This document shows positions 11,101-53,828 of a stretch of DNA of 64,000 nt, piece after piece. The notes under the pieces are model-generated. The model searched no databases. It saw nothing but the letters and a program-made list of their open reading frames with translations, and had not been told where the DNA came from. Made by a program: the position numbers and the translations under genes. The stretch is from Lytechinus pictus (taxonomy: Eukaryota), in contig NC_087246.1 in assembly GCF_037042905.1 (NCBI RefSeq), positions 29,016,001 to 29,080,000 on the forward strand. The letters run 5' to 3'. Position 1 is the stretch's first letter. The number at the start of each line of letters is the position of its first letter.

Positions 11101-14100
11101 GATGGGCCACTACACCAGGGCCCCCCCCCCAGCTACTCTTAAACAAATAGTGCAGTGGGTACTGTAAGTGCAAAGACAGTGACTCTCCTCTACATGGGGC
11201 CTCCATTTAACATCCTATCCGAGGGACGTAGTGTTTTCCTCTGTAACATATAGCCTGCGTCTATGGAACGTGGGAGGGGCACGTTACACACAACGTAGGT
11301 TTCACTCATCCTCAATTGGACGTTATACTTATTCATGGATCAGGCAATTTACATTCACTTCGTCTACGTCTCAGAAAGTCTCTTTTAGGACAAAGGTTAA
11401 ACCCATTGGTCCTACTATCAATGTGGTCTCATTGCCGTTTGTTTTAAAACCACATTTCTTAGGTAGTAATTGTTTTTTTTATGCCAAAGAAGGATTTACT
11501 ACAATATACTTAATCGGAGCACTTAAGAATATATTTCTGTGTTCATGATGTAAGCTGGCAAATAATTATGGTACTGGTATTAAATTCTAAAAATATTATC
11601 TTGAACATTTTTGGGGGGAGGGTGGTTACCGGTATTTGAATCTATGTACAGTTTTAAAAAAATTAATCTAATGTAATTGTTGATTGTTTTCTAACCTGGT
11701 TATATCTGGTAGTGTCACAAGTTTCCCAGCCTTCACTGCAGCATTGAAGCTTTCAGCACCAAATGTTTCCATGGCAACTACAGGAACATCACTCCATCCA
11801 ACCCTCTGAAGACCCTGAACGACCCCGCAGAGCAGGCCTCCACCCCCGACGCATGTAACAACCACGTCAGGTTTTTTACCATGAAGCTGGTTTTGGATTT
11901 CCAAAATCATAGTCTCATGCCCTTCCCTGTTAAGTATTGAAAGGGGTTCAACAGCCTTTTAAGTGAGAAATATTAGGAACAAAGAATAAATGATAAATCA
12001 TGTTTAATTTAAACCTATTTGGACCCATCCCATAGCCTCTATAAATTGTATTAGAGAAAATATGTCCAGAGGATGTAAATCAGACTATTCCAGACAAGAT
12101 AGCCATTTCAATTAAATTTGTAGGCAATATTCAACAGATTTTTGAGAGGTGATGTTGGACAGTAATACCACAAATAACAAATTATCTGTGCTGTTTGATG
12201 CATAGATATTGTAATTTGACAATGAAGTAGAAATAAAATATCTGGACATCAACCCCCATTGTGCTATAACATACCGGTACATGATGTACCATGTACAAAT
12301 AATAATATTAATAATGGTAATATTAATAATAATAATAATAACCACAATAATAATAATTATAATAATNNNNNNNNNNNNNNNNNNNNNNNNNNNNNNNNNN
12401 NNNNNNNNNNNNNNNNNNNNNNNNNNNNNNNNNNNNNNNNNNNNNNNNNNNNNNNNNNNNNNNNNNNNNNNNNNNNNNNNNNNNNNNNNNNNNNNNNNNN
12501 NNNNNNNNNNNNNNNNNNNNNNNNNNNNNNNNNNNNNNNNNNNNNNNNNNNNNNNNNNNNNNNNNNNNNNNNNNNNNNNNNNNNNNNNNNACTGATAATA
12601 ATACTAATAGTTATACTAATAATCATTGATATTTATATTGCGCTTTAGACAAAAGTTTCAAAACAAATACCCATGATGGTAAGCAAAAATGCCTTCAATT
12701 TTAAAATCCCCCTTCCCTACTTTGGTTGGAGATAAGAATTGAATGTCCCATTAATCACATATTGCAAATATTTTTGTATCATACCAAACATCGGGATGAT
12801 CAAACGGATGGATGACTACTGCTGAAGGATCTTCCTCTGCCAATTGAAGAGCATGTTGGTTAGCATAGTCCCATACCTGTAAAGAATCATGTATGATATG
12901 TGCTGATTTGCCAGACAAACAAAATATTTAAGACTCATGGTCAGTTTTCCAATGATCGAGTTAGGATCTAATCTTACAATGGACGTTAACCGTAATATAT
13001 AGTTGGTTTTAATAAAACAAAAACAAACGAAACATCTATCCCACCAACATGCGAAACATCCAACCCCCTCCTTAAAAAAAGGGAGAGAAAGAGAGAGATA
13101 GAGAGAGAAAAAAAGACAGAGGAAAGAAATTGGTTTGCCTACTTTTCCATGGACAATGACATTGGCTCCAAGATCTCGTATTTTGTCTGCCATAAATTTG
13201 GGTGTACTCTCCGGAACCACAACTATTGCTGGCATACCAAGTTGTCTTGCAGCATATGCAGCAGCGTACCCGGCATTTCCTCCTACAAAACCAAAGATAA
13301 GACAACACTGTAAAATCATTGCAAAAATGTCAAGAGGGTGCTGATGACAGTTTGAAGTCATTCAAATTTTGTTCTTTACTGCATGGATTTACATTTCCCT
13401 ACATGTATGTGAGGTTAAGAATCAATAACTGAGAAATTTGACACATTTCAAACTAAATTATGAACTGCCTAAATTAACAACCATAATTACTCTATTAAAC
13501 AGGGACAACTTCTCAAAGACCTTGAGAGTTTAACTACTATATTGATATACATTTCAACAAGAGACCAAATTATCATCATTTTCAATCAGTTATCAAAGCA
13601 ATAGACATCTCGTTATCTGAAAGGACTTGATAGACCTTTGTGGGCTTGCATACTCTTTAAACCAAATATCAACCAAAGTATAACTTATAAAGGTTGCCAG
13701 TTGAAAACACACTTCCAGGCGTTTGCTCAAGTAGACAAGACTATCTGAAATTACACTTCCCATACCTGATAGGATTGTGGGATATTACCTGATGAACTTA
13801 TGATTCTTGTGTATCCAGCTTCAAGAGCCTGCAAATCACCAAAAAAAGTAAAATCAACGTCCATGAATACAGATACTCATCAATCCGTTTAGTAGTCCAT
13901 GATTCGACATTGATATTTCACTTGTATGCACAGATGATAATAACAAAGTCCTGGAAAAACAATGTTTTTCTTTTTTGTGATGAGGCTTAGGATCATCCAA
14001 TAGTAGTGAATTATAAACTGTTCATTTTTTTAAGTTAAGAATTAATCTCTTCTTTCAGTAGGCATATCTTACTGGTATCTTTTCAGAACTATTAAAGACC

Positions 14101-27480: not shown

Positions 27481-28582
27481 TTGTATTTTTCTGCGGGAAA
27501 GATAAGCCGTTACCATGGCAATGGATCTTTTGCAAATACTTTGATGACTTTATAGGCCTATATCTAGAAATTAAATTTGGAAGGCTTAAAAATGATAGAT
27601 TGGACCATTTAAATTGACAGGGTAATATGCCATATAGGCTCAATATGTTATTTTTTAAAAACATATTAATCAGTTGCCATGGCAACGGCGGAAGGAGGCA
27701 TTTATGAAACTGGCAACAAGCGGATTCATGTTCAGCACCATATAAATAGAGGAAATGACACAAAAAATCAGATTCTAAAGAAAAGTCTACTTGAAAAATT
27801 ATGACAATTCCGTTTAGGCCCTATACTCTTACAAGTATTATCATACTACAATCAGGTTGAGCGGAGTTAGGGCAGGCTGCTATCTCAAGGTATGCCCTCG
27901 CTAATTCATTCACACAACAAATATTCATTCTAGAAAAATTTGTCATGACGACATATCAGGACCTCCTGCACCTGCGACTCTCACATTTTCATTCATCATA
28001 TAAGAATATAACATTTTTCACTGTTTTTAGGAGTTTTTAAAGTGATTGAAACAAAACCGTAATTTGGTGCAGTTGCGGTACAGTTGATCGAAGTTCAAAC
28101 AGTTATCGGGTTACTTTACATTTAAAGCAGTATTTCACGATGATTTATTAAGGGATTGATTTTATTTTTCCACACTTTGTTTTTTCATGTAATGGTCTCC
28201 TCTTGGGTGCTTAATTATGCGAGTATACTAAACAATAAGGAATTTGGGACGAATTTAAAATGATAATCATAATAAGCAGCGTGCGCATCGCGCTTGTGAG
28301 GGTGAGCGAGAATTGGGCAGCGAACGGTACTGACATACAGCCTAGTTAATACAGTTACAGGGGTACATTTTATTATATTTATAATCTTATTAAATTCTTG
28401 TTCAATCTTAATCTTTTAATGGCCTTTTAAAGTTTTTAGTTTTAAGAGCATGGGTACCAGTACCACTTCATCAATCTGAGATTGTGAACTTGTGAACCTC
28501 ACCCCTCCTCCCACTAAAAAGAAATTTCATTGCCCTTGCACAATATCATTATCAATTTATATTTTTATTCCTATATTTGCAG

Positions 28583-31500
28583 ATGGGAGGTGAGGATGTC
28601 TATGTGTGTTATCATGAAAGTGACAACAAGTTTGCACAATTTCTAGCTGGTAAGCAAAATCAGGGAATAATTTTCCCGGTATCACATCGCAATTTACTCC
28701 ACACTTTTTAAATACTGCTACACATACAGACATAAAGTCTTTTGTACAGCATATTTTAACATACAACTGTACATTACTAAGTTGAGACTTGAGAGCTTTT
28801 CTCTTAGGACCAAAAATGCTATTCATATTTGTAAAGCAAAATTACTCCCTGAAAATATAGATATTTGACTGACTGGGCTGAGACCCTGTGAGATTATGTA
28901 AAGTAATGTTACTTTATAACAGTGTAAACAAGGTTTTAAAATCCCCTAAATACCTACATGTATTGTATCAAATCAAAATAAATATCCATGGTTATTAGTA
29001 CATGTGTTTATAAATAATGAAAACCTAATTGAAGAGAAATAAAAGGAAAGATAAAGTCTTTTCATTCACTTGCTCAGTTTTGAGTTTTAGCCTTGGATTT
29101 GTTTGAAAATCCTAGAATGTATCGATATTGCTATATACAATTACCTTTTCAATATGATTATTTTTCCTCACCTTGAACCTGGAAGTATGAGGTGCCCTGC
29201 ATAGAAAAACAAATGTCTTAATTCTTCTGATTACTGTTTTGGATTTCACAGATAATTTAAGACAAAATGGGTTGGGAGTGTGGAGACCCAACACCGATGC
29301 CCCCTCCAGCAAAGGCAAAGCTCTTGTCGATGCCAAGGTAAACTAATATGTACCTAATGATTCGTAATGACATCTGGGTGAAATTCTGCAGAAATTAATC
29401 CCACCCCCATTCTATTTCTATGGACATTTCTATTTCCCCTCATTCATGAAATCCTGATTATATTAATATGAATTTCTCTAAGACTGAGTCCCCCAACATA
29501 TAAAGTGTGAAATATCAAACAGGCACACAAAAATTATTTGGTCATTTGTATATATATATATTTGGGTATGTATCATAGTGATACTTGGATTTTATATGCC
29601 AACATTGTATTATATTTTTAGAGTTTTTCAAACAGGAATATGGAATAATTCATTGGTACTATCAAAAGAAAATTAGAAAATCAGTTCAGCCTTCAATTGC
29701 TACATTAAAAAAAAAATCTTATTGAAACAGGCTTGAAAAATATGCATAAAACAGCCAATTTGTGTATTTCTATCCGAACCACGGGTGCAAGAATTATCAA
29801 AACAGCTTTATTTATGTTTACAGGTCTGTCTTGTGATCTTGAGCGAGGCTTCCCTGCAGGATAAATCATGTGAAGATGCAATTTCTCTGGCATATATATC
29901 TGATAAACCTGTCTTCCCTGTAGCCATCAAAGCATTCCCAGATCTGGAAAAGAATCTCACCTTCTCCATGTAAGTTGCAAAGAAATTTTTGATATAAAGA
30001 AGAGGCATTTTTGTGGAAGACTAGAGTTATGTTTTTTTACCATAGTGATATCAAAACTAAATTACAAATCAAAATGTTTGCGTAATATAAATACTGACTA
30101 AATATGTGGATTGATCACTCTATTCACAGCCATTAACCCATTAGTGACTGAGCATACATATATGTAGGCTGGAGTCTATGGAAAATGTGTTATAGCAAAA
30201 TTATCCAGTCTCCAACGGGTTAATATAAATGGCTCTGTTCTTCCTGAAAGTACAACAAAACTTACTAAAAAAAGATGTAAGATGTTATACACATATATAA
30301 AAGTACTTGTGCAATATTAAAAAAAATAGATAAAAAGATCATAATCAATGATTTAATGCACATCTAAATAGGTTAATAGGAAATTGACTCCCACCAACAA
30401 GAAAAATATTAAGGTTTATCTTGAAGTACAAAATGGTCCCCAGTCTTCTTTAAACCCAACATGTACATATTTATATTCCTCATAACAAATTGATTTTTGT
30501 ATGAATTAATGTTTACGAAAAATGTAATGAAATGGAAGAAAATAAATGTTTATTTGAATTGAATTGAAAAAGTCATGCATCACAGCTTTAGGAAAACCCA
30601 AGGCCTTTTGTGGTCAAAATCTCCTATTCACATTTTTCATGTTTACTGCTCGTTTGTTTTTTAATCAGCAACGTCATATTAATCACGTAATAATTCATCT
30701 TTTCTTCCAGGAGGCTGATATTGGCCAAACTGAACTGGGTGTTCTTCATACCATCCGAGGACTCCTCCGAGTACCCCACCCAATCCCTGCCTGTCCTCAT
30801 TTCATCCATGAAGCGGGAGATAGAAGCAGTCTCGCAACGTGACAAGCCCCAAGCTGGAGATATCGAAGGTAATCTCGAGGGTGGTGGTTCATCCCAACGA
30901 GCTTTCTACAAACGATGGAACAGCGTGAAAGATGACGTAGAGCAGATTGATTTCTGGGAGGAGAACTTTGGCAGTGCAAAAGAAGTCACATGGATCAAAT
31001 TCAGGGAAGCTTTCCTGGATGTCTATGAAGAACAGATCAATGGTCAGTTTTTTCTATTGGAAAGTTATTTTTAAAGTAAATTTTTTCTCTTTTTTTGAAA
31101 GATTTTTTAAAGTTAGCATCTTTTTTGTAAGTTGTTTGAAAAAAGGAGAAAATCACAGAAGCAGATTGATGAAAGTTAAACGAAACCAGCCAAAATATAT
31201 AAAGAAAATTAATATTTTTATGTTGTAATAAGTAGTAATCACTAGATCTATTATTCTGTACATATAGGTGGGGGATTTCATATTCGTCAAAAAGATCGTT
31301 GTTAGGAAGTGTACAGACAGACAACCACTTGTGCTCCTATTCCAATACACAAAATAAACATATCTTATATTCAGAATATTTTTCATTTATGAGGGCATAT
31401 AACAAAAACAAATCTTGTAATCTAATCACCATTCCCATGGAAAAGGCAAAACCACAAAGTCCTGATAAAAATGACAAATAGAAGGGTTGTCCTAACCACT

Positions 31501-34500
31501 TCCCTAATCAAGAAGTTGACAGTTTGCAATTCCCATGGAATTAGTAATCTCATTTTTCAAACAGTCATTTTAATTTTCTTTAAAATTTTCAATATTCGGT
31601 TTCCTTTTTTTTCATTAGTACAAATCGTGAAGTTTGATTGGCCTTCTAATAGCTGACCGTGGGGGTCAATTGTTTTAATAATGTATTTTGATAATAATAG
31701 TTACATTTATAATTATATAGCGCTTTATACATTGGTTTATAAGTGCTTTACATTGTGACTATTATTACCCTGGTCATAGGATCCATCACTGTTCCACACA
31801 TGAAGTGCACCATCTCCACTCCCTGGGGAGTATCCTGGCCAGGCAACCTTTTATCAGTGCACACATGCCAATGTTATCATAATTACTTTCACATCCTACC
31901 GGGTACCCATTTGACACCTGGGTGGAGACTGACAAATGTGGATAAGTGCCTTGCCAAAGGACATTAGCGCCGGATGGGATTCGAACCCTCCACCGTTGGT
32001 TTAAGAGTCAAGTGAATGAACCACTACACCTTCCATGACACATCCACAAGAAATGTGGAGGTCACATTTCAGAAATGTGACTCAGAATGACAATAAATGT
32101 TCTGGAATAACCAGAGCATTAATAATAGTATTGATTTAACATGCAGAATGCATCCATTAGTGTAAACACCCAATACTTATTGCTTGTTATTTGATTATAT
32201 GGAACAAAAATGAACAAACTATTTAATATAATGTAATCTGTATTACAATCACAGCTGTACATAATGTGACTTAGGCTCCTGGCTCTTGTGGCTGTAATAT
32301 AAAGCCTTTATAAATCCAAGTGATTACGTCAAATTTGTGGTTTGGTTCACTTTGCTTTGTTTTTATTGTCAGTGGAAATTATTATTTCAGACCTACAGTC
32401 ACTTGAATCCCCCTCCCAACGATGATGAAAACCTGATGAAAAGTCCAGCTAAAGTAAAGTTGGGTAAAATTTGAATTTCCACAAATTTCAAGACTATTCT
32501 TCCTGTAGATTTTCAAGGTTATAAGTGTGATATTGTCAATACATAGATTTAAGTGTTCTACATATAAATTTACTTTAAAAACATAACTCTAAGATCTAAA
32601 TTGATTCTGGTGTCTTGTGTTGCTAGATCAAATTACATCCAGCAATACCCAATGGATCATCAATATCCTGTATGGAGATGTCCTGGAGCTTAAAAAGACT
32701 GTATCAAAGAAGATGTACGATGATTTCTGTGGAGACGCATCCTGGGGTCCTGATCGATTCTTCCTACGTCTCATGGATTACGCCAAGGGGACTATCGCTA
32801 TGAGAGGAGTCTTTAACATGAAGAGTACTGTCAGACTTGATGCTGTCCAGAACCTTGGTATGTGAATCTCAGTCATAATATGCTTCATTGTCGTTTACCT
32901 GCAAAAATTAATAGTACATGCATGATAAGTAAAGATTCATGCTTGCTCCGTAACAAATAACAACTCACTGTTGCGACTTTTTCGCAAATTATCACATGGC
33001 ATCTATGGGCAAATGACAATTGCAATGAAGGGGAGGCCCTTATATTGTTTGAGATTTTGCAGCTTCTGTGTGCACAGGACTACATCCAGCTCGCGAAAGA
33101 TGGCTAGGAATCTTTTTAATTGCCGGTTCCCACTTGTGTGACAAGTTGAAGCGGAGCCCTCTCTTGCGAGGGATGGGCTTTCCACTCTTTCGGCTTCCTT
33201 GATGCTACATTCAAAACACCTGGATTCCTTTTCCAACATACCTTAATACTTGTTTTATTCACAATAGCAAATTGGATGGACACCGTATGACATTTTATAG
33301 ATTATGGAATGCATGCTGAAAATCAGGTTATATAGGGAAAATATAGGGTTTGCTGAAAGGATTACTTTTCAAGAAAAACTGATACTTAACATTATGATTC
33401 ATTTCACCCTTTCCTTTACCAGGTCAGTTCCGTACTGCACCGGTGATAACATCTCTTCTCTCTTTACTTGATGACAAGGATGCTAATATGAGAGCTGTAG
33501 CAGCCATTGCTTTAGGAAAGACAGGTAGGATGAAGAGGTATCTCAGTTTTTGTCTCGCCTGCGTAGCGGAGCGAGACATAGGTATCACTATTTCCGGCGT
33601 CGTCGTCGTCGTCAACAATTGCGTTGTACACCCGGGGGGGGCCACTTCCATTCACGAGTGGATACCATGCGCGACCATGGGGTCTCGAAAAGCACCCTAA
33701 ACACGTAATTTCCATATTCTGAAAATGCACCCCTTAACAAGTATTGGCGTGTGAAACCCTACCCTTAACAATTATTGGAAACAAAACGATACTCTTGGCA
33801 AATATTCCCTGAAATGAACCCCTAAACAAGTACAGGAATGTTTTATTGTTACGGGTCCTTCGGTCGTCGGCTTTACCTTATTTTGGTTTAGTACGACCCC
33901 ACCTTCTACACTTTGCGCAAATCGGACTCTAAACACGAAGTGTTGGGGCAAAATGGACATCCTTTATAAAACATTTTAATTTTGTTTTATCATTCCCGCA
34001 AATTCGACCCTAAACACGTAATTTTCCTAGCGAAATAGACACCCTTTTTTCATTATTTTTGTGTTTTTGATATACCCTTATCACGTTACGTACGTAACGT
34101 GCCCTATCGTGAAAAGGACATCCTTTTTACGTGTTTTTTTGGTCGCGCATGGTATCCACTCGTCAATGTAAGTGGCCCCCCCGGGGTTGTACACCCAATA
34201 ACTTTCTATAGCTTCGAGGTGGGATCACCAAATTCATACCAGAGGTCCATCTCCTGAAGGCACAGGTCAAGTTTGAATATGAATCGAATTTGAATAAGGT
34301 CAAAGGTCAATGAACTTTCCATGACTGGCACTGTGCTATGTTGTACACATAATAACTTTGTATATCTTCGAGGTGGGATCACCAAATTCATACCAGAGGT
34401 CCATCTCCTGAAGGCACAGGTCAAGTTCGAATATGAGTCGAAATGTGAATAAGGTCAAAGGTCAATGAACTTTCCATGACTGGCACTGTGCTGTGTTGTA

Positions 34501-36678
34501 CACACAATAACTTTCTATAGCTTTGAGTTGGGATCGCCAAATTCATACCAGAGGTCCATCTCCTGAAGGCATAGGTCAAGTTCGAATATTAGTCGAATGT
34601 GAATAAGGTCAAAGGTCAATGAACTTTCCATGACTGGCACTGTGCTGTGTTGTACACACAATAACTTTCTATAGCTTCGAGTTGGGATCGCCAAATTCAT
34701 ACCAGAGGTCCATCTCCTGAAGGCACAGGTCAAGTTCGAATATTAGTCTAATGTGAATAAGGTCAAAGGTCAATGAACTTTCCATGACTGGCACTGTGCT
34801 GTGTTGTACACACAATAACTTTCTATAGCTTCGAGGTGAGATCGCCAAATTCATAACAGAGGTCCATCTCTTGAAGGTGCAGGTCAAGTTCAAATGTGAG
34901 CCGAATTTGAATAAGGTCAAAGGTCAATGAACTTTCCATGACTGGCACTGTGCTGTGCTGTACACACAATAATTTTCTATATCTTTGAGGTAGGATTGCC
35001 AAATTCATACAAGAGGTCCATCTTTTGAAGGTGCAGGTCAAGTTCGAATGTGAGTTGAATTTGATGAAGGTCAAAGGTCAATGAACTTTCCATGACTGGC
35101 ACTGTGCTGTGTTGTACACATAATAAATTTTTATATCTTCGAGGTAGGATTGCCAAATTCATACAAGAGGTCCATCTCTTGAAGGTGCAGGTCAAGTTCA
35201 AATGTGAGTTGAATTTGATTAAGGTCAAAGGTCAATGAACTTTCCATGACTGGCACTGTGCTATTTTGTACACACAATAACTTTCTATAGCTTCGAGGTG
35301 GGATCGCCAAACTCGTAACAGAGGTCCATCTCTTGAAGGTGCAGGTCAGGTTCGAATGTGAGTTGAATTTTATTAAGGTCAAAGGTCAATGAACTTTCAC
35401 ACTACTTTGTTCCTCTAGTGACATGAACTTTATCATTTTATACTTTTTAACACTAACATTTTACTTCAGAACTCAGTACTCTCTATACCTGAACCAGATT
35501 TTGTATTTTACTTGTTTATTCTTTGAAAACTGTTATTTATTTAATGAGCTATAGTTCTTGGCACCATTTATAATATTCACACAAATTTGCCAATGGTACA
35601 ATAGAAAAGCTGTCAAGGTTTCTTAAATGTTACCCTTTAGATTTGACATGCAGTCTCTTCATGACTGCAATATGCAGGCGAGACAACGCTTGGCGTTTGC
35701 CTTGTTTTAAATAATCACATTTGAATAATATTTGACCTTGATGTATTGTGACAAGTTTGTTCACGATCCTATACACCATGCTTAGTCTGCTCATGGAAAC
35801 AGTATGTAAACATTTATTGAAATTATGGGGAAGACATATATTGAGTTATCTTGAAGTAAGTGGCTCTGATATTAAATAGAATCATGCAGCTCTTTTACAT
35901 GTGTTTTAAACATAATTTTCGGATTTAAACTTTTGTTTACTCCCTTCTCTATTCCACCGCTCTGAATACAGAGGTGAGAAGCAAACGGGTCGTGACTAAG
36001 CTGATCTCTAAACTGACGGATGAAGATCGTTTGGTGAGAGAGGCAACATGTTTATCCCTTGGTCATCTCAAAGCCAAGTCTTCAGTGCCCAAGTTGGTTG
36101 AAAGATGGTCAGTACCTTATGTCAAAGTTTACAGACGGATTATCTCTTTGAATTCATTTACTTTCTCTTCTCATTCATGCAGCAGTGTATGATTGAATTA
36201 TTAAAAAAATAATAATTTCAAGATAGAATGGGATGACAGTGCCTCCTGGCATGTCTGGCAAGCAAACGCCCCCTGCCCCCCTAAAAAGTACATAACTGTT
36301 TACCATTTCCTATTAGTAGGGTATTTACTTTTCAAGGGAAACTCCACTAGTTACAGCCCTGAATTTTTCCAAACCCATTACTAGTCCCCCCCCCCCTTCC
36401 TCCCTTCTCTCTCTCTCTCTTTCTCAAATTCTGTGTGGGGTGGAACTTTTTTGTTTTGTTTTGTTTATCATTGGCATCTCCTCTCTTGGAACCTCTATAA
36501 AGAAATATTCCATTCTCGACTTATCCACCACAGGAGGAGCGATGTGATATCAGATGTGAGAAAATCAGCAGAGATTGCACTGGAGCAGGTGGGTTCCGAA
36601 GAATCCCAGAATGCACTCCGGATGACGTACCTGCTCTCCCAGGAAATGACTAAACTTGAAGCGGAGGATGTGAGCTAG
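28583..36678 (+). CDS. Uncharacterised 414-aa protein: N-terminal TIR (TIR_2-like) domain, central Cbl-type EF-hand-like region, C-terminal HEAT repeats. Exons 28583-28649, 29252-29337, 29824-29969, 30711-31042, 32627-32857, 33423-33524, 35972-36107, 36534-36678
   Basis: Eight exons splice GT-AG in phase to 1245 nt ending in TAG. TIR pattern: DVYVCYHESDNKFAQFLADNLRQNGLGVW...VCLVILSEASLQDKSCEDAISLAYISDKPVFPV. HEAT repeats: LLSLLDDKDANMRAVAAIALG, LISKLTDEDRLVREATCLSLG, SDVISDVRKSAEIALEQVG. The ATG directly follows an acceptor (TTGCAG|ATG), so an upstream exon is likely. Confidence 0.85.
30137..30219. mobile_element. Tiny piggyBac-like MITE (83 bp)
   Basis: TTAA|CCCATTAGTGACTG...CAGTCTCCAACGGG|TTAA. 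Confidence 0.65.
31690..32045 (-). mobile_element. tRNA-derived SINE
   Basis: Minus strand has A-box-like GGTGTAGTGG, B-box GGTTCGAATCC, core TCCTTTGGCAAGGCACTTATCC...CTCCACCCAGGTGTCAAATGGGTACC, and an L2-type tail AAAGCGCTATATAA..TATTATT. Confidence 0.8.
33547..35706 (+). mobile_element. Second HINE/DINE-1-like family carrying eight 154-bp tandem repeats (intron 6 of the TIR-HEAT gene)
   Basis: 5' subTIR GTCTCGCCTGC (33552) with hairpin partner GCGAGAC, (CGT)n, tandem array 34186-35400, 3' subTIR GCAGGCGAGAC (35674-35684), terminal hairpin AACGCTTGGCGTT, ends CTTGTT. Confidence 0.85.
33631..34185. mobile_element. CCCGGG-terminal MITE nested in the HINE-like element
   Basis: About 45-bp TIRs CCCGGGGGGGGCCACTTCCATTCACGAGTGGATACCATGCGCGACCA; 8-bp TSD GTTGTACA (33623-33630, 34186-34193). 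Confidence 0.9.
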
Positions 36679-51887: not shown

Positions 51888-53828
51888 CAGGGCCGTAGCT
51901 AGAGGGGGGGTATGGGGGGGTGTGACACCCCCCCAACATTCATGGCAGTCGGCAAAATCATGTACCAGTTGGCAAAATGGAGGATAGGGGAGNNNNNNNN
52001 NNNNNNNNNNNNNNNNNNNNNNNNNNNNNNNNNNNNNNNNNNNNNNNNNNNNNNNNNNNNNNNNNNNNNNNNNNNNNNNNNNNNNNNNNNNNNNNNNNNN
52101 NNNNNNNNNNNNNNNNNNNNNNNNNNNNNNNNNNNNNNNNNNNNNNNNNNNNNNNNNNNNNNNNNNNNNNNNNNNNNNNNNNNNNNAAGAAGGTTACGAC
52201 TCATGGAGTAAAGACAACCCATCGGCAAATCCAAGTCCATGTAGCCAGGCTTAGAGCCCTACTAGTCAGCAAAATACAAAGGACAAAACAGATGGAGCTA
52301 TAATAACACACAAAGTAAGCCCCCGGTCCTCCCCTAATATAAACAAGCTTGTGAGTTTGCAAATTATACCACAATTATTGACGATTTAACAAACACATTA
52401 GTTTTGTAAAATTAGAGGCAAGACAAAGTGATGTACAAGTACTGCCCCGTTTCAGAACTGAAAAGAACAAAACTCTGCAGTTGGCAAATTCATGAAGACA
52501 AGTGTACAACTTGTAGACTTGTCTACAAGTTTGCAGTTGGCAAAAAACACAAGTTATTATTGTTTTGTGTAGTGATATGTGCTTTTTTCATGAATATATA
52601 CTTGAAGTGACTGCCCCCTTTTAAGGCCTTAATATAAAACATTTCCAGTCTGTGTTTACGTTTGCATTGGTGTGGACCGATATAGGTACCGGGCTGGTGT
52701 TAAATCAACACCGGCGTGTTTTTTTTTGCAGTGCACAAATTCCTAAAGACAGTCCTTAAAATGTCCCTTTTTCTGATCTAATTATAACAAATTTTCAGCT
52801 CGCGCTTCGCGCTCGCATCACTTGATTAGCGAAATAGTAAATTCCTACAAACAAGCCATAGAATGCCCCTCTTCAGGTCTAAATTTCAAAAATTGTCAAC
52901 TCGCGCTTCTGGGCCGCAATATTTCATTAGTGAAATACGTATCATGTTCATGATTGTTCATGATTACAATGACCACAAAAAGTGCTTCATGTGCTTAGTT
53001 GTAATTATAACAAAATTAGCAAGCGCTTGGCGCTCGCATTAGATGACTATGATGAGATACGTACGCACTTCATGAATTCCAAAAGATAGTCCTTAAAATG
53101 TCCCTTTTTAGGGTCAAGTTATACAAAAAAATTCCGCTCGCGCTTCGCGCTCGCATTGTTTGTTTTGTGAGACAGGTACATATCATGATTACAAAACTTT
53201 GCTTATAATGTCCCTTTTTAGGACTGAATATCAAACATTTTCAGCTCGCGCTTCGCGCTCGCATTATTTGATCACTAAGATACATATCCGTTTAATTGCA
53301 TAGTCCTTAAAGTGTCTCTATTAGGTCAGTATACCTGGCAATTGAGCGCGCTTCGCGCGCCCACTTAATGACTCAAACTTTTTGCTGCCCCCCCCCCCCA
53401 ATGCCGCGACCCACGGTACGCCACTGTTAGCAGTAGCACTCTTGAAATTTTAGTTGAGTGTCTTGCAAAGAAGGTCAATTAAAAATTAAAAAATCTTTGA
53501 TTTTTATATTATTAATGCATAGGGTATATAATTATACTGCAAGTTAGCAACTACGGCACACTAGCCTTTCTATTTTGATCCAAAATGTTTATTTTTACAG
53601 TGCAAATATCTTTGTATATCTTTGTATAATTTACCTTAAAGTATTCACCAAATGCCACTAATTTAATTCTAAAAATTCAAAATCTTTTGGCATGTAATTA
53701 TTGTAGGGGGGGGGGGCACATCCCCCATCAGACTACCCCTATGCTCACGTTGGTGCGATCACGCCAAATTTAGTTGGCAAATTTAGCTGGTACACCCCCC
53801 CAACAAAATGCTTCTGGCTACGGCCCTG
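51888..53828. mobile_element. hAT-like non-autonomous element containing gap 51993-52186 and a nested repeat with GCTCGCGCTTCGCGCTCGC units
   Basis: CAGGGCCGTAGCTAGA...TCTGGCTACGGCCCTG; exact 8-bp TSD CCTGATCT (51880-51887, 53829-53836). Confidence 0.85.

What the first reader, a model, noticed from the sequence alone, without database searches (positions are those of the whole stretch)
28583..36678. Unrecognised signalling architecture: TIR, Cbl-type EF-hand-like module, HEAT repeats
Seen: a clean 8-exon ORF, most of whose exons are poorly represented in the ORF track. About the first 130 aa follow the TIR_2 pattern. The middle segment DFWEENFGSAKEVTWIKFREAFLDVY...VLELKKTVSKKMYDDFCG parallels the EF-hand-like subdomain of the Cbl TKB domain ([26 protein letters not shown]...DYISVFEFDIF, from memory). 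The C-terminus has 3-4 HEAT repeats. Known: the canonical animal TIR adaptors are MyD88, TIRAP, TICAM and SARM1 (ARM-SAM-TIR), and the Cbl EF-hand normally sits beside an SH2. I do not know of this combination. Inference: a cytosolic TIR adaptor or sensor in an expanded invertebrate innate-immune repertoire.
Basis: partly seen in the sequence, partly recalled or inferred. Interest (0 to 1): 0.85.

Follow-up and report, generated by a model that had tools for sequence, protein, structure and literature searches.

The report
Sea-urchin TIR, Cbl-type EF-hand, HEAT protein
This is a real, expressed sea-urchin gene for a cytosolic protein that joins a TIR signalling domain to a Cbl-type EF-hand-like module and four HEAT repeats. 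It belongs to an old, uncharacterised animal gene family rather than to a lineage-specific immune expansion.

Summary
Eight coding exons (28583-36678, + strand, all GT-AG) splice into a 414-aa ORF. It is 98.8% identical over its full length to Lytechinus variegatus LOC121408375. Stranded RNA-seq reads confirm the five junctions between exons 1 and 6.

The three domains are real:
- TIR_2, residues 6-113.
- An EF-hand pair, residues about 179-246. Its nearest relatives by sequence profile and by fold, in every library searched, are the Cbl / Cbl-b / Cbl-c EF-hand-like domain.
- Four PBS-type HEAT repeats, residues 279-413.

This is not part of an expanded repertoire. It is one of two ancient paralogues of a family found from sponges and placozoans to amphioxus and tunicates. 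No vertebrate member appeared in my searches.

The TIR is closest to NAD-cleaving TIRs such as SARM1. The inferred catalytic Glu is kept in 35 of 48 family members but is Ala in sea urchins; the paralogue in this genome keeps it.

The most likely role is a non-enzymatic TIR scaffold or regulator, with the highly conserved EF-HEAT module as the partner-binding part. Function is inferred, not shown. The scan had noted this same stretch once before (s1-306780).

The parts
28583..28649 (+). Coding exon 1 (start codon, TIR beta-A). An acceptor AG sits at 28581-28582, and the transcript continues 5' into an upstream exon that was not located.
   Evidence: contig X1 record 2 maps from 28581 and has 138 nt more at its 5' end.
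29252..29337 (+). Coding exon 2 (TIR).
   Evidence: Junction 28649>29252 seen in RNA reads and contigs. Model.
29824..29969 (+). Coding exon 3 (TIR beta-C / alpha-C / beta-D). Codon 29878-29880 (GCA) is Ala70, at the inferred catalytic-Glu position.
   Evidence: Junctions. Pfam TIR_2 on the exon alone, E 0.005. Column counts.
30711..31042 (+). Coding exon 4: end of the TIR, the disordered linker (residues 147-175) and the first helix-loop-helix of the EF-hand-like pair (motif starts at about 30949).
   Evidence: The Cbl match centres on this motif.
32627..32857 (+). Coding exon 5: second helix-loop-helix of the EF-hand-like pair, the connecting helix (residues 254-273) and the first HEAT helix.
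33423..33524 (+). Coding exon 6 (HEAT repeat).
   Evidence: Pfam HEAT/HEAT_2 on the exon. Junction 32857>33423 in RNA reads.
35972..36107 (+). Coding exon 7 (HEAT repeat).
   Evidence: Pfam HEAT_2, E 1.3e-5, on the exon. Ungapped match to P0019.
36534..36678 (+). Coding exon 8 (last HEAT repeat, C-terminal helix, stop codon TAG at 36676-36678).

Best explanation
The locus is an intact, transcribed gene for a 414-aa soluble cytosolic protein with three modules:
- An N-terminal TIR domain of the TIR_2 / SARM1-like class, about residues 5-145.
- After a roughly 30-residue disordered linker, a pseudo-EF-hand pair homologous to the EF-hand-like domain of the Cbl tyrosine-kinase-binding region. Neither loop has a calcium-ligand pattern.
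- Joined to that by one long helix, four PBS-lyase-type HEAT repeats.

It is the sea-urchin (Lytechinus) orthologue of an ancient metazoan family with two paralogous branches.

Inferred mechanism. The TIR mediates homotypic TIR-TIR assembly. The EF-HEAT block is the most conserved part of the protein and acts as a rigid partner-binding or regulatory platform. In sea urchins the Glu that NAD-cleaving TIRs need is replaced by Ala, so this copy most likely acts as a non-enzymatic scaffold, adaptor or regulator rather than as an NADase.

Shown: gene structure, expression, domain folds, family membership and the Glu-to-Ala state.

Inferred: scaffold function, binding role of EF-HEAT, and lack of calcium binding.
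For: Gene and expression.

TIR:
- Pfam TIR_2, 46 bits.
- The family profile hits SARM1 TIR best in the PDB, E 9e-6.
- Foldseek on the full model finds SARM1, plant RPV1/RUN1 and AbTir TIRs.

EF-hand:
- AF2 gives helix-strand-helix twice, at 181-245, with pLDDT about 90.
- The family profile against the PDB hits only Cbl / Cbl-b, E 8e-5; the next hit is at 0.37.
- 31 of 48 members hit Pfam Cbl_N2 individually, best E 3e-5. No generic EF-hand family is hit by more than 4 members.
- The Foldseek top 50 in the PDB are all Cbl-family TKB domains.
- VIA-align's top hit is Cbl 6xar_A, Z 6.9 over 89 residues, against calmodulin at 5.4.
- Swiss-Prot models: ranks 1-10 are all Cbl proteins.

HEAT.

Conservation by module, Lytechinus against Ptychodera: HEAT 57%, EF 51%, TIR 44%, linker 22%.

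Glu column: E 35, Q 5, A 4 (all four echinoids), L 3, R 1 of 48. RNA reads show no variant at the Ala codon.

Cytosolic: no hydrophobic segment.
Against: - No functional data exist for any family member.
- The window's own protein scores below Pfam's Cbl_N2 cut-off: 13.7-16.1 bits against 22.
- Foldseek E-values for Cbl are weak, 0.24 and worse.
- Sequence similarity to Cbl is concentrated in about 30 residues of the first helix-loop-helix.
- The equivalence of Ala70 with the catalytic Glu rests on a gapless motif match to the plant TIR alpha-C motif, which I took from established knowledge. HMMER's own alignment to SARM1 ended just before this position and did not confirm it.
- The TIR is no less conserved in echinoids than in lineages that keep Glu, so loss of a function is not visible as relaxed constraint.
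- The upstream exon was not found, so a longer N-terminus cannot be fully excluded.
Confidence: 0.6

Rival explanations
1. The protein is a regulated TIR NADase built on the same logic as SARM1. The EF-HEAT solenoid senses a ligand or partner and releases the TIR, which then cleaves NAD+.
For: - The nearest solved TIRs are NAD-cleaving ones: SARM1, AbTir and plant TIRs.
- 35 of 48 family members keep the Glu. Sixteen also have Tyr (three more Phe) four residues before it; these are mostly, though not only, second-branch members.
- A helical-repeat domain beside a TIR recalls the ARM domain of SARM1.
Against: - The window's protein has Ala at the Glu position, as do all four echinoid orthologues.
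- There is no SAM or other oligomerisation domain.
- Domain order is the reverse of SARM1's.
- No enzymatic data exist.
Confidence: 0.12
2. The urchin copy is a pseudoenzyme. It regulates the Glu-bearing paralogue on another chromosome, or TIR receptors, by co-assembling through its TIR as a brake or decoy.
For: - The same genome carries a second-branch paralogue whose TIR exon keeps the Tyr-Cys-x-Asp-Glu motif.
- The Glu-less copy is still strongly conserved: 87% identity to Strongylocentrotus.
Against: - This is purely inferential; no interaction was tested.
- Crinoids and some other lineages also lost the Glu independently, which fits any non-enzymatic role equally well.
Confidence: 0.15
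3. The middle domain is a generic EF-hand pair, and its likeness to Cbl is convergence in one short motif, not common descent.
For: - Similarity is concentrated in the first helix-loop-helix.
- Foldseek E-values are 0.24 and worse.
- VIA Z of 6.9 lies within the range that the tool's own notes call common for helical models.
- There is no 4H bundle or SH2 domain alongside.
Against: - The evidence is reciprocal. Pfam's Cbl_N2 profile picks out 31 of 48 members, while generic EF-hand profiles pick out at most 4.
- The family's profile picks out only Cbl in the PDB.
- Cbl ranks first in four structure libraries that hold many other EF-hand structures.
- The loop length and spacing of the first, non-canonical hand are identical to Cbl's by direct reading.
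Confidence: 0.2
4. The ORF is a chance or decayed reading frame (a pseudogene or a gene-model artefact).
For: None beyond the short exons.
Against: - Spliced stranded RNA reads are present.
- The match to orthologues is ungapped.
- The family is conserved across phyla.
Confidence: 0.01

Closest known systems
Cbl / Cbl-b / Cbl-c tyrosine-kinase-binding region, EF-hand-like domain (Pfam Cbl_N2, PF02761)
   Same: - EF-hand pair fold.
- The same short, non-canonical first loop with matching spacing of Phe-Trp, Phe-Gly, Val, Trp and Phe-Arg positions.
- Best match by profile and by fold in all libraries.
   Different: - No 4H bundle before it, no SH2 after it and no RING domain.
- The second loop lacks Cbl's calcium ligands (read directly from the sequence).
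- The window's protein is below Pfam's cut-off.
SARM1 (ARM-SAM-TIR NADase)
   Same: - A cytosolic TIR of the same sequence class; it is the best PDB sequence hit.
- The TIR is paired with an alpha-helical repeat domain.
   Different: - Domain order is reversed.
- HEAT of the PBS-lyase type rather than ARM.
- No SAM octamerisation domain.
- The inferred catalytic Glu is Ala in this protein.
Conserved invertebrate TIR-domain proteins ('ecTIR-DC' families of Gerdol et al. 2017, as cited in PMC6321704 and PMC8662601)
   Same: - A cytosolic TIR protein that is widespread in invertebrates, with no vertebrate member seen.
- A Trichoplax sp. H2 member exists. PMC6321704 says eight Trichoplax TIR proteins fall in these families.
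   Different: I could not read the 2017 paper. I therefore cannot say which numbered family this is, or whether the EF-hand-like module was noted there.
Bacterial TIR-HEAT proteins (for example P0072, from an Anaerolineae metagenome-assembled genome)
   Same: An N-terminal TIR with the Glu, followed by PBS-type HEAT repeats; hhalign probability 98.7%.
   Different: No EF-hand-like module between the two parts. The middle of the alignment has no confidence.
STAT linker-SH2 and Dictyostelium Shk kinases (EF-hand-like domain before an SH2)
   Same: The same EF-hand-like fold class appears among the weaker matches: 1uus at Z 4.8, and ShkA/C/D.
   Different: Much weaker matches than Cbl, and there is no SH2 domain here.

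Membership tests
TIR domain (Pfam TIR_2, PF13676) | Profile score above the curated cut-off | tested here: met
   46.2 bits against a cut-off of 28, residues 6-113, on P0019 (98.8% identical proxy). Exon 3 alone gives E 0.005.
TIR domain (Pfam TIR_2, PF13676) | Flavodoxin-like alternating beta/alpha fold that matches solved TIR domains | tested here: met
   AF2 shows strands at 6-9, 52-57 and 81-85 with intervening helices. Foldseek hits SARM1, RPV1, RUN1 and AbTir TIRs at E 1e-3 to 5e-3, probability 1.00.
NAD-cleaving TIR enzymes (SARM1, plant and bacterial TIRs) | Catalytic Glu in helix alpha-C (aromatic-Cys-x-x-Glu-Leu context in plant TIRs) | tested here: not met
   Ala70 (GCA, 29878-29880). 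The family column reads E 35, Q 5, A 4, L 3, R 1. The positional equivalence is inferred from the motif, not from a superposition.
Cbl_N2 EF-hand-like domain (PF02761) | Profile score above the curated cut-off (22 bits) | tested here: inconclusive
   The window proxy scores 13.7 bits as a whole protein and 16.1 bits as the domain alone, both below the cut-off. 31 of 48 family members hit at E up to 1. The best E of 3e-5 corresponds by my estimate to about 25 bits.
Cbl_N2 EF-hand-like domain (PF02761) | EF-hand pair fold that is closest to Cbl among solved structures | tested here: met
   - Foldseek PDB top 50 are all Cbl family.
- VIA-align top hit is 6xar_A, Z 6.9, 89 residues aligned.
- Swiss-Prot models, ranks 1-10, are all Cbl proteins.
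Cbl tyrosine-kinase-binding region (4H + EF-hand + SH2) | Four-helix bundle before the EF-hand and a divergent SH2 after it | tested here: not met
   No Cbl_N or Cbl_N3 hit in Pfam. The model shows one helix plus a disordered linker before the EF-hand, and HEAT repeats after it.
Calcium-binding EF-hand | 12-residue loop with acidic ligands at positions 1, 3, 5 and 12 | tested here: not met
   Read directly from the sequence against the model's strand positions. The first loop is short, as in Cbl. The second loop has Met at position 12 and only one acidic residue. Some second-branch members do have acidic loops.
HEAT repeats (HEAT_2 PF13646, HEAT_PBS PF03130) | Profile scores above cut-off and a helical-hairpin solenoid | tested here: met
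   HEAT_2 93 bits, HEAT 33.7 bits, HEAT_PBS 24.8 bits. Alpha-Rep and PBS-type HEAT structures are the top PDB hits. Four hairpins at 279-413.
SARM1 orthologue | ARM-SAM-SAM-TIR domain order | tested here: not met
   No SAM hit. The TIR is N-terminal and the repeats are C-terminal.
MyD88 / TIRAP / TICAM adaptors | Death domain (MyD88) or family-specific regions | tested here: not met
   Pfam finds only TIR_2, HEAT families and sub-threshold Cbl_N2.
ecTIR-DC families (Gerdol et al. 2017) | Assignment to one of the numbered conserved invertebrate TIR families | not testable with these tools
   The paper is not held, and the figure in the PMC6321704 supplement is not readable as text. The phyletic pattern is consistent.

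The most novel reading that the evidence does not exclude
The family is an ancient animal TIR enzyme or sensor, invented independently of SARM1. A Cbl-type EF-hand fused to a HEAT solenoid gates a membrane-tethered NAD-cleaving TIR; 20 of 48 members begin with a myristoylation-like Met-Gly motif. The TIR-HEAT core may descend from bacterial TIR-HEAT proteins. Sea urchins would then have turned one paralogue into a catalytically dead regulator of the other. It would also be the first occurrence of the Cbl EF-hand-like module outside the Cbl family, showing that the module existed as a mobile unit before it became fixed beside an SH2 domain.
Probability: 0.15. Interest if true: 0.7.

Novelty: new variant of a known kind. 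Interest (0 to 1): 0.5.

Why it matters
TIR proteins are central to immunity in animals, plants and bacteria, but the animal ones that have been studied are almost all vertebrate-type adaptors plus SARM1. This locus belongs to a family that is conserved from sponges to amphioxus and has no vertebrate member in my searches. No paper in the searched library mentions it.

Three things make it useful:
- It gives a second home for the Cbl EF-hand-like domain, which Pfam models only from Cbl proteins.
- It pairs a SARM1-class TIR with a very conserved helical-repeat module, a natural candidate for a ligand-gated or partner-gated TIR.
- Sea urchins offer a natural experiment: one paralogue lacks the catalytic Glu and one keeps it, in an animal where knock-downs and larval immune assays are routine.

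It does not overturn anything. It is a well-supported annotation of an uncharacterised family.

Tried and rejected
- Pfam on single exons gave nothing for exons 4 and 5. The Cbl signal appeared only with the whole protein or the whole domain.
- A search of 1.84 billion representatives with exon 4 alone gave only 10 weak hits, but these led to the full-length relatives.
- I looked for an upstream coding exon with the myristoylated Met-Gly-Cys extension seen in hemichordate, amphioxus and nemertean members. Nothing was found in 10-29 kb of the window, by tblastn or by motif scan.
- A narrower TIR profile (alpha-C to beta-E), meant to force an alignment across SARM1's catalytic Glu, found nothing useful. 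The Glu equivalence therefore stays an inference.
- The idea that the echinoid TIR is under relaxed constraint after losing Glu was rejected. The TIR is the least conserved folded domain in every lineage, with or without Glu.
- The language-model look-alike search on the middle domain gave only scores below 0.8.
- Literature searches found nothing for TIR-HEAT, for Cbl EF-hand together with TIR, or for the locus names. Gerdol et al. 2017 is not held.
- No complex prediction was run, because the report claims no specific binding pair.


Full report
**Observation**

The region 28583-36678 holds eight + strand exons with AG/GT borders. They join in frame to a 1245-nt ORF of 414 codons plus a stop. 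The spliced protein is 98.8% identical, residue for residue without gaps, to P0019. That protein is annotated 'uncharacterized protein LOC121408375 [Lytechinus variegatus]'. The spliced protein is also 87% identical to S. purpuratus LOC100888669. The window is therefore from a Lytechinus sea urchin, and I used P0019 as a proxy wherever a tool needed a stored protein.

Two raw stranded RNA-seq runs and two sets of transcript contigs show the splice junctions 28649>29252, 29337>29824, 29969>30711, 31042>32627 and 32857>33423. The reads lie with the first mate on the minus strand, as expected for a + strand mRNA in a standard stranded library.

A 1369-nt contig accounts for all eight coding exons by length. 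It also carries 138 nt further 5' of 28581 that do not lie in 27700-28580. The exon starting at 28583 is therefore preceded by an upstream exon that I did not locate. I found no upstream coding extension within 18 kb.

The reads also show coding polymorphisms (Tyr10His, Asp23Glu, Gln124Glu) but none at the Ala70 codon.

**Domains**

Pfam on the proxy gives TIR_2 at 6-113 (46 bits, cut-off 28) and HEAT_2, HEAT, HEAT_EZ and HEAT_PBS at about 279-384. It also gives a sub-threshold Cbl_N2 match at 179-223 (E 0.1).

An AlphaFold2 model built on a 48-sequence family alignment has mean pLDDT 84.8. It shows:
- A TIR-like beta/alpha domain.
- A disordered stretch at 147-175.
- A helix / short strand / helix unit twice, at 181-245. 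This is the signature of an EF-hand pair.
- A long helix at 254-273.
- Four helical hairpins at 279-413.

Foldseek on the whole model finds alpha-Rep and PBS-type HEAT proteins, then the TIR domains of SARM1, plant RPV1/RUN1 and AbTir.

**The Cbl question**

From the family side:
- A profile of the middle region searched against all PDB sequences returns only Cbl-b and Cbl (E 8e-5 to 1e-3). The next hit is noise at E 0.37.
- The alignment is driven by the first helix-loop-helix, where the spacing of the conserved aromatic, Gly, Val and Arg positions is identical to Cbl's.

From the Cbl side:
- Pfam's Cbl_N2 profile hits 31 of the 48 family members individually, best E 3e-5.
- No generic EF-hand profile hits more than four members.

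By structure, using a separate model of residues 174-278 (pLDDT 86.8):
- The Foldseek top 50 in the PDB are all Cbl, Cbl-b or Cbl-c TKB domains. The best is E 0.24, probability 0.95, about 65 residues at 3.2 A and 23% identity.
- VIA-align, run independently of Foldseek over 48,161 chains, puts Cbl 6xar_A first with Z 6.9 and 89 aligned residues (chain 183-283). Calmodulin follows at Z 5.4, and a Dictyostelium STAT at Z 4.8.
- In Swiss-Prot models, ranks 1-10 are all Cbl proteins, followed by an EF-hand protein and Dictyostelium SH2 kinases.
- In AlphaFold DB clusters, the first two hits appear to be family members (a 38%-identical uncharacterised protein and a Lingula protein), followed mostly by Cbl and SH2-domain proteins.

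Each single number is modest, and the window's own protein does not pass Pfam's cut-off. The agreement of reciprocal profiles and four structure libraries nevertheless makes homology to the Cbl EF-hand-like domain the best reading; I put it at about 0.8. There is no 4H bundle and no SH2 domain, so this is not a Cbl TKB region. Neither loop has a calcium-ligand pattern by direct reading.

**Family and distribution**

Two database searches recovered about 48 full-length relatives with the same architecture. They come from a calcareous sponge, Trichoplax, an acoel, all five echinoderm classes, hemichordates, amphioxus, a tunicate, gastropods, bivalves, a cephalopod, a brachiopod, nemerteans and an annelid. 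None is named beyond 'uncharacterized' or 'TIR domain-containing'. No vertebrate, arthropod or nematode protein appeared, but absence was not tested exhaustively.

A maximum-likelihood tree places the window's protein beside L. variegatus, inside echinoids, inside an echinoderm-hemichordate branch. A second branch holds a crinoid, Saccoglossus, the tunicate and most molluscs.

In the window's own 812-Mb genome, exon 4 is single-copy. A profile search finds one further locus on another contig, and it belongs to the second branch. This is therefore a conserved gene pair, not an expanded repertoire.

The family fits the description of the conserved invertebrate TIR families cited in PMC6321704 and PMC8662601. 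I could not read the defining paper to assign a number.

**The TIR and the Glu**

The family's TIR profile is closest in the PDB to SARM1 (E 9e-6), then to AbTir and other NAD-cleaving TIRs.

After strand beta-C the family has the Ser-x-x-Ser-x-x-Ser-x-aromatic-Cys-x-Asp-Glu-Leu pattern. By established knowledge of plant TIRs, this pattern carries the catalytic Glu. That column reads Glu in 35 of 48 members, Ala in all four echinoids (including this window, codon 29878-29880), Leu in three members including both crinoids, and Gln or Arg in six others. The paralogue in the same genome keeps Tyr-Cys-Lys-Asp-Glu.

This agrees with the scan's separate note s1-306901. I could not confirm the residue equivalence by an explicit alignment to SARM1, so it remains an inference.

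**Constraint**

In every lineage pair I compared, the HEAT and EF modules are more conserved than the TIR, and the linker is barely conserved. Lytechinus against Ptychodera gives HEAT 57%, EF 51%, TIR 44% and linker 22%. The echinoid TIR is not more relaxed than TIRs that keep Glu.

Twenty of 48 members begin with a myristoylation-like Met-Gly motif, several of them Met-Gly-Cys. The echinoderm first-branch proteins, including this one, do not match that motif, apart from one crinoid (Antedon) that fits the loose pattern. The protein has no hydrophobic segment.

**How it most likely works**

The anatomy is a TIR on a flexible tether attached to a rigid, strongly conserved EF-HEAT block. That suggests a protein in which the helical block binds a conserved partner or ligand and the TIR assembles with other TIRs.

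For this urchin copy the missing Glu argues for a scaffold, adaptor or regulator rather than an enzyme. A regulated-NADase reading fits the Glu-bearing relatives better than it fits this protein. A brake-on-the-paralogue reading is attractive but untested. All of this is inference, and no functional evidence exists in the searched literature.

**Verdict**

- The Cbl-type EF-hand claim is supported.
- The 'expanded repertoire' part is not supported.
- The gene is an ordinary, intact member of an uncharacterised but ancient family whose architecture is a new variant among TIR proteins.
- Interest is moderate.

Noticed in passing
window 34186-35398: A 154-bp tandem array with 7.9 copies and 93% matches fills much of intron 6 of the gene. 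The array itself was not covered by the read laying.
   Followed up: partly
window 28695-28893, 31680-32077, 33471-33650: Intronic stretches with contig depths above 1000 in two runs, and many loose read ends. They are probably dispersed repeats or transposon fragments that are transcribed elsewhere.
   Followed up: no
window 55374 (+ strand): An ORF begins Met-Gly-Cys-Cys-Ser-Ser-Gly-Gly, a dual-acylation-like N-terminus. It presumably belongs to a different gene about 19 kb downstream.
   Followed up: no
L008 6684-6532, L004 2854-1471 and L010 8061-4935 (G000:C9, about 13.68-13.70 Mb, minus strand): Second-branch paralogue of the family in the same genome. Its TIR exon keeps the Tyr-Cys-x-Asp-Glu motif that the window's gene has lost.
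   Followed up: partly
L010 5150-7200: About 15 tandem copies, roughly 142 bp apart, each repeat the first 18-19 codons of the paralogue's last coding exon, just upstream of the real exon. It is an exon fragment amplified as an intronic satellite.
   Followed up: no
window 28610, 29252-29253, 30781: RNA reads from the same species carry coding differences from the assembly: Tyr10His, Asp23Glu and Gln124Glu. His10 matches the L. variegatus RefSeq protein.
   Followed up: partly
P0072 (Anaerolineae metagenome-assembled genome protein, 462 aa): A bacterial protein with an N-terminal TIR (Glu present) followed by PBS-type HEAT repeats. It aligns to the animal family at hhalign probability 98.7% but has no EF-hand part. 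This could reflect a shared origin or convergence.
   Followed up: partly
window 12367-12590 and 51993-52186: Runs of N (assembly gaps or masked stretches), outside the gene.
   Followed up: no
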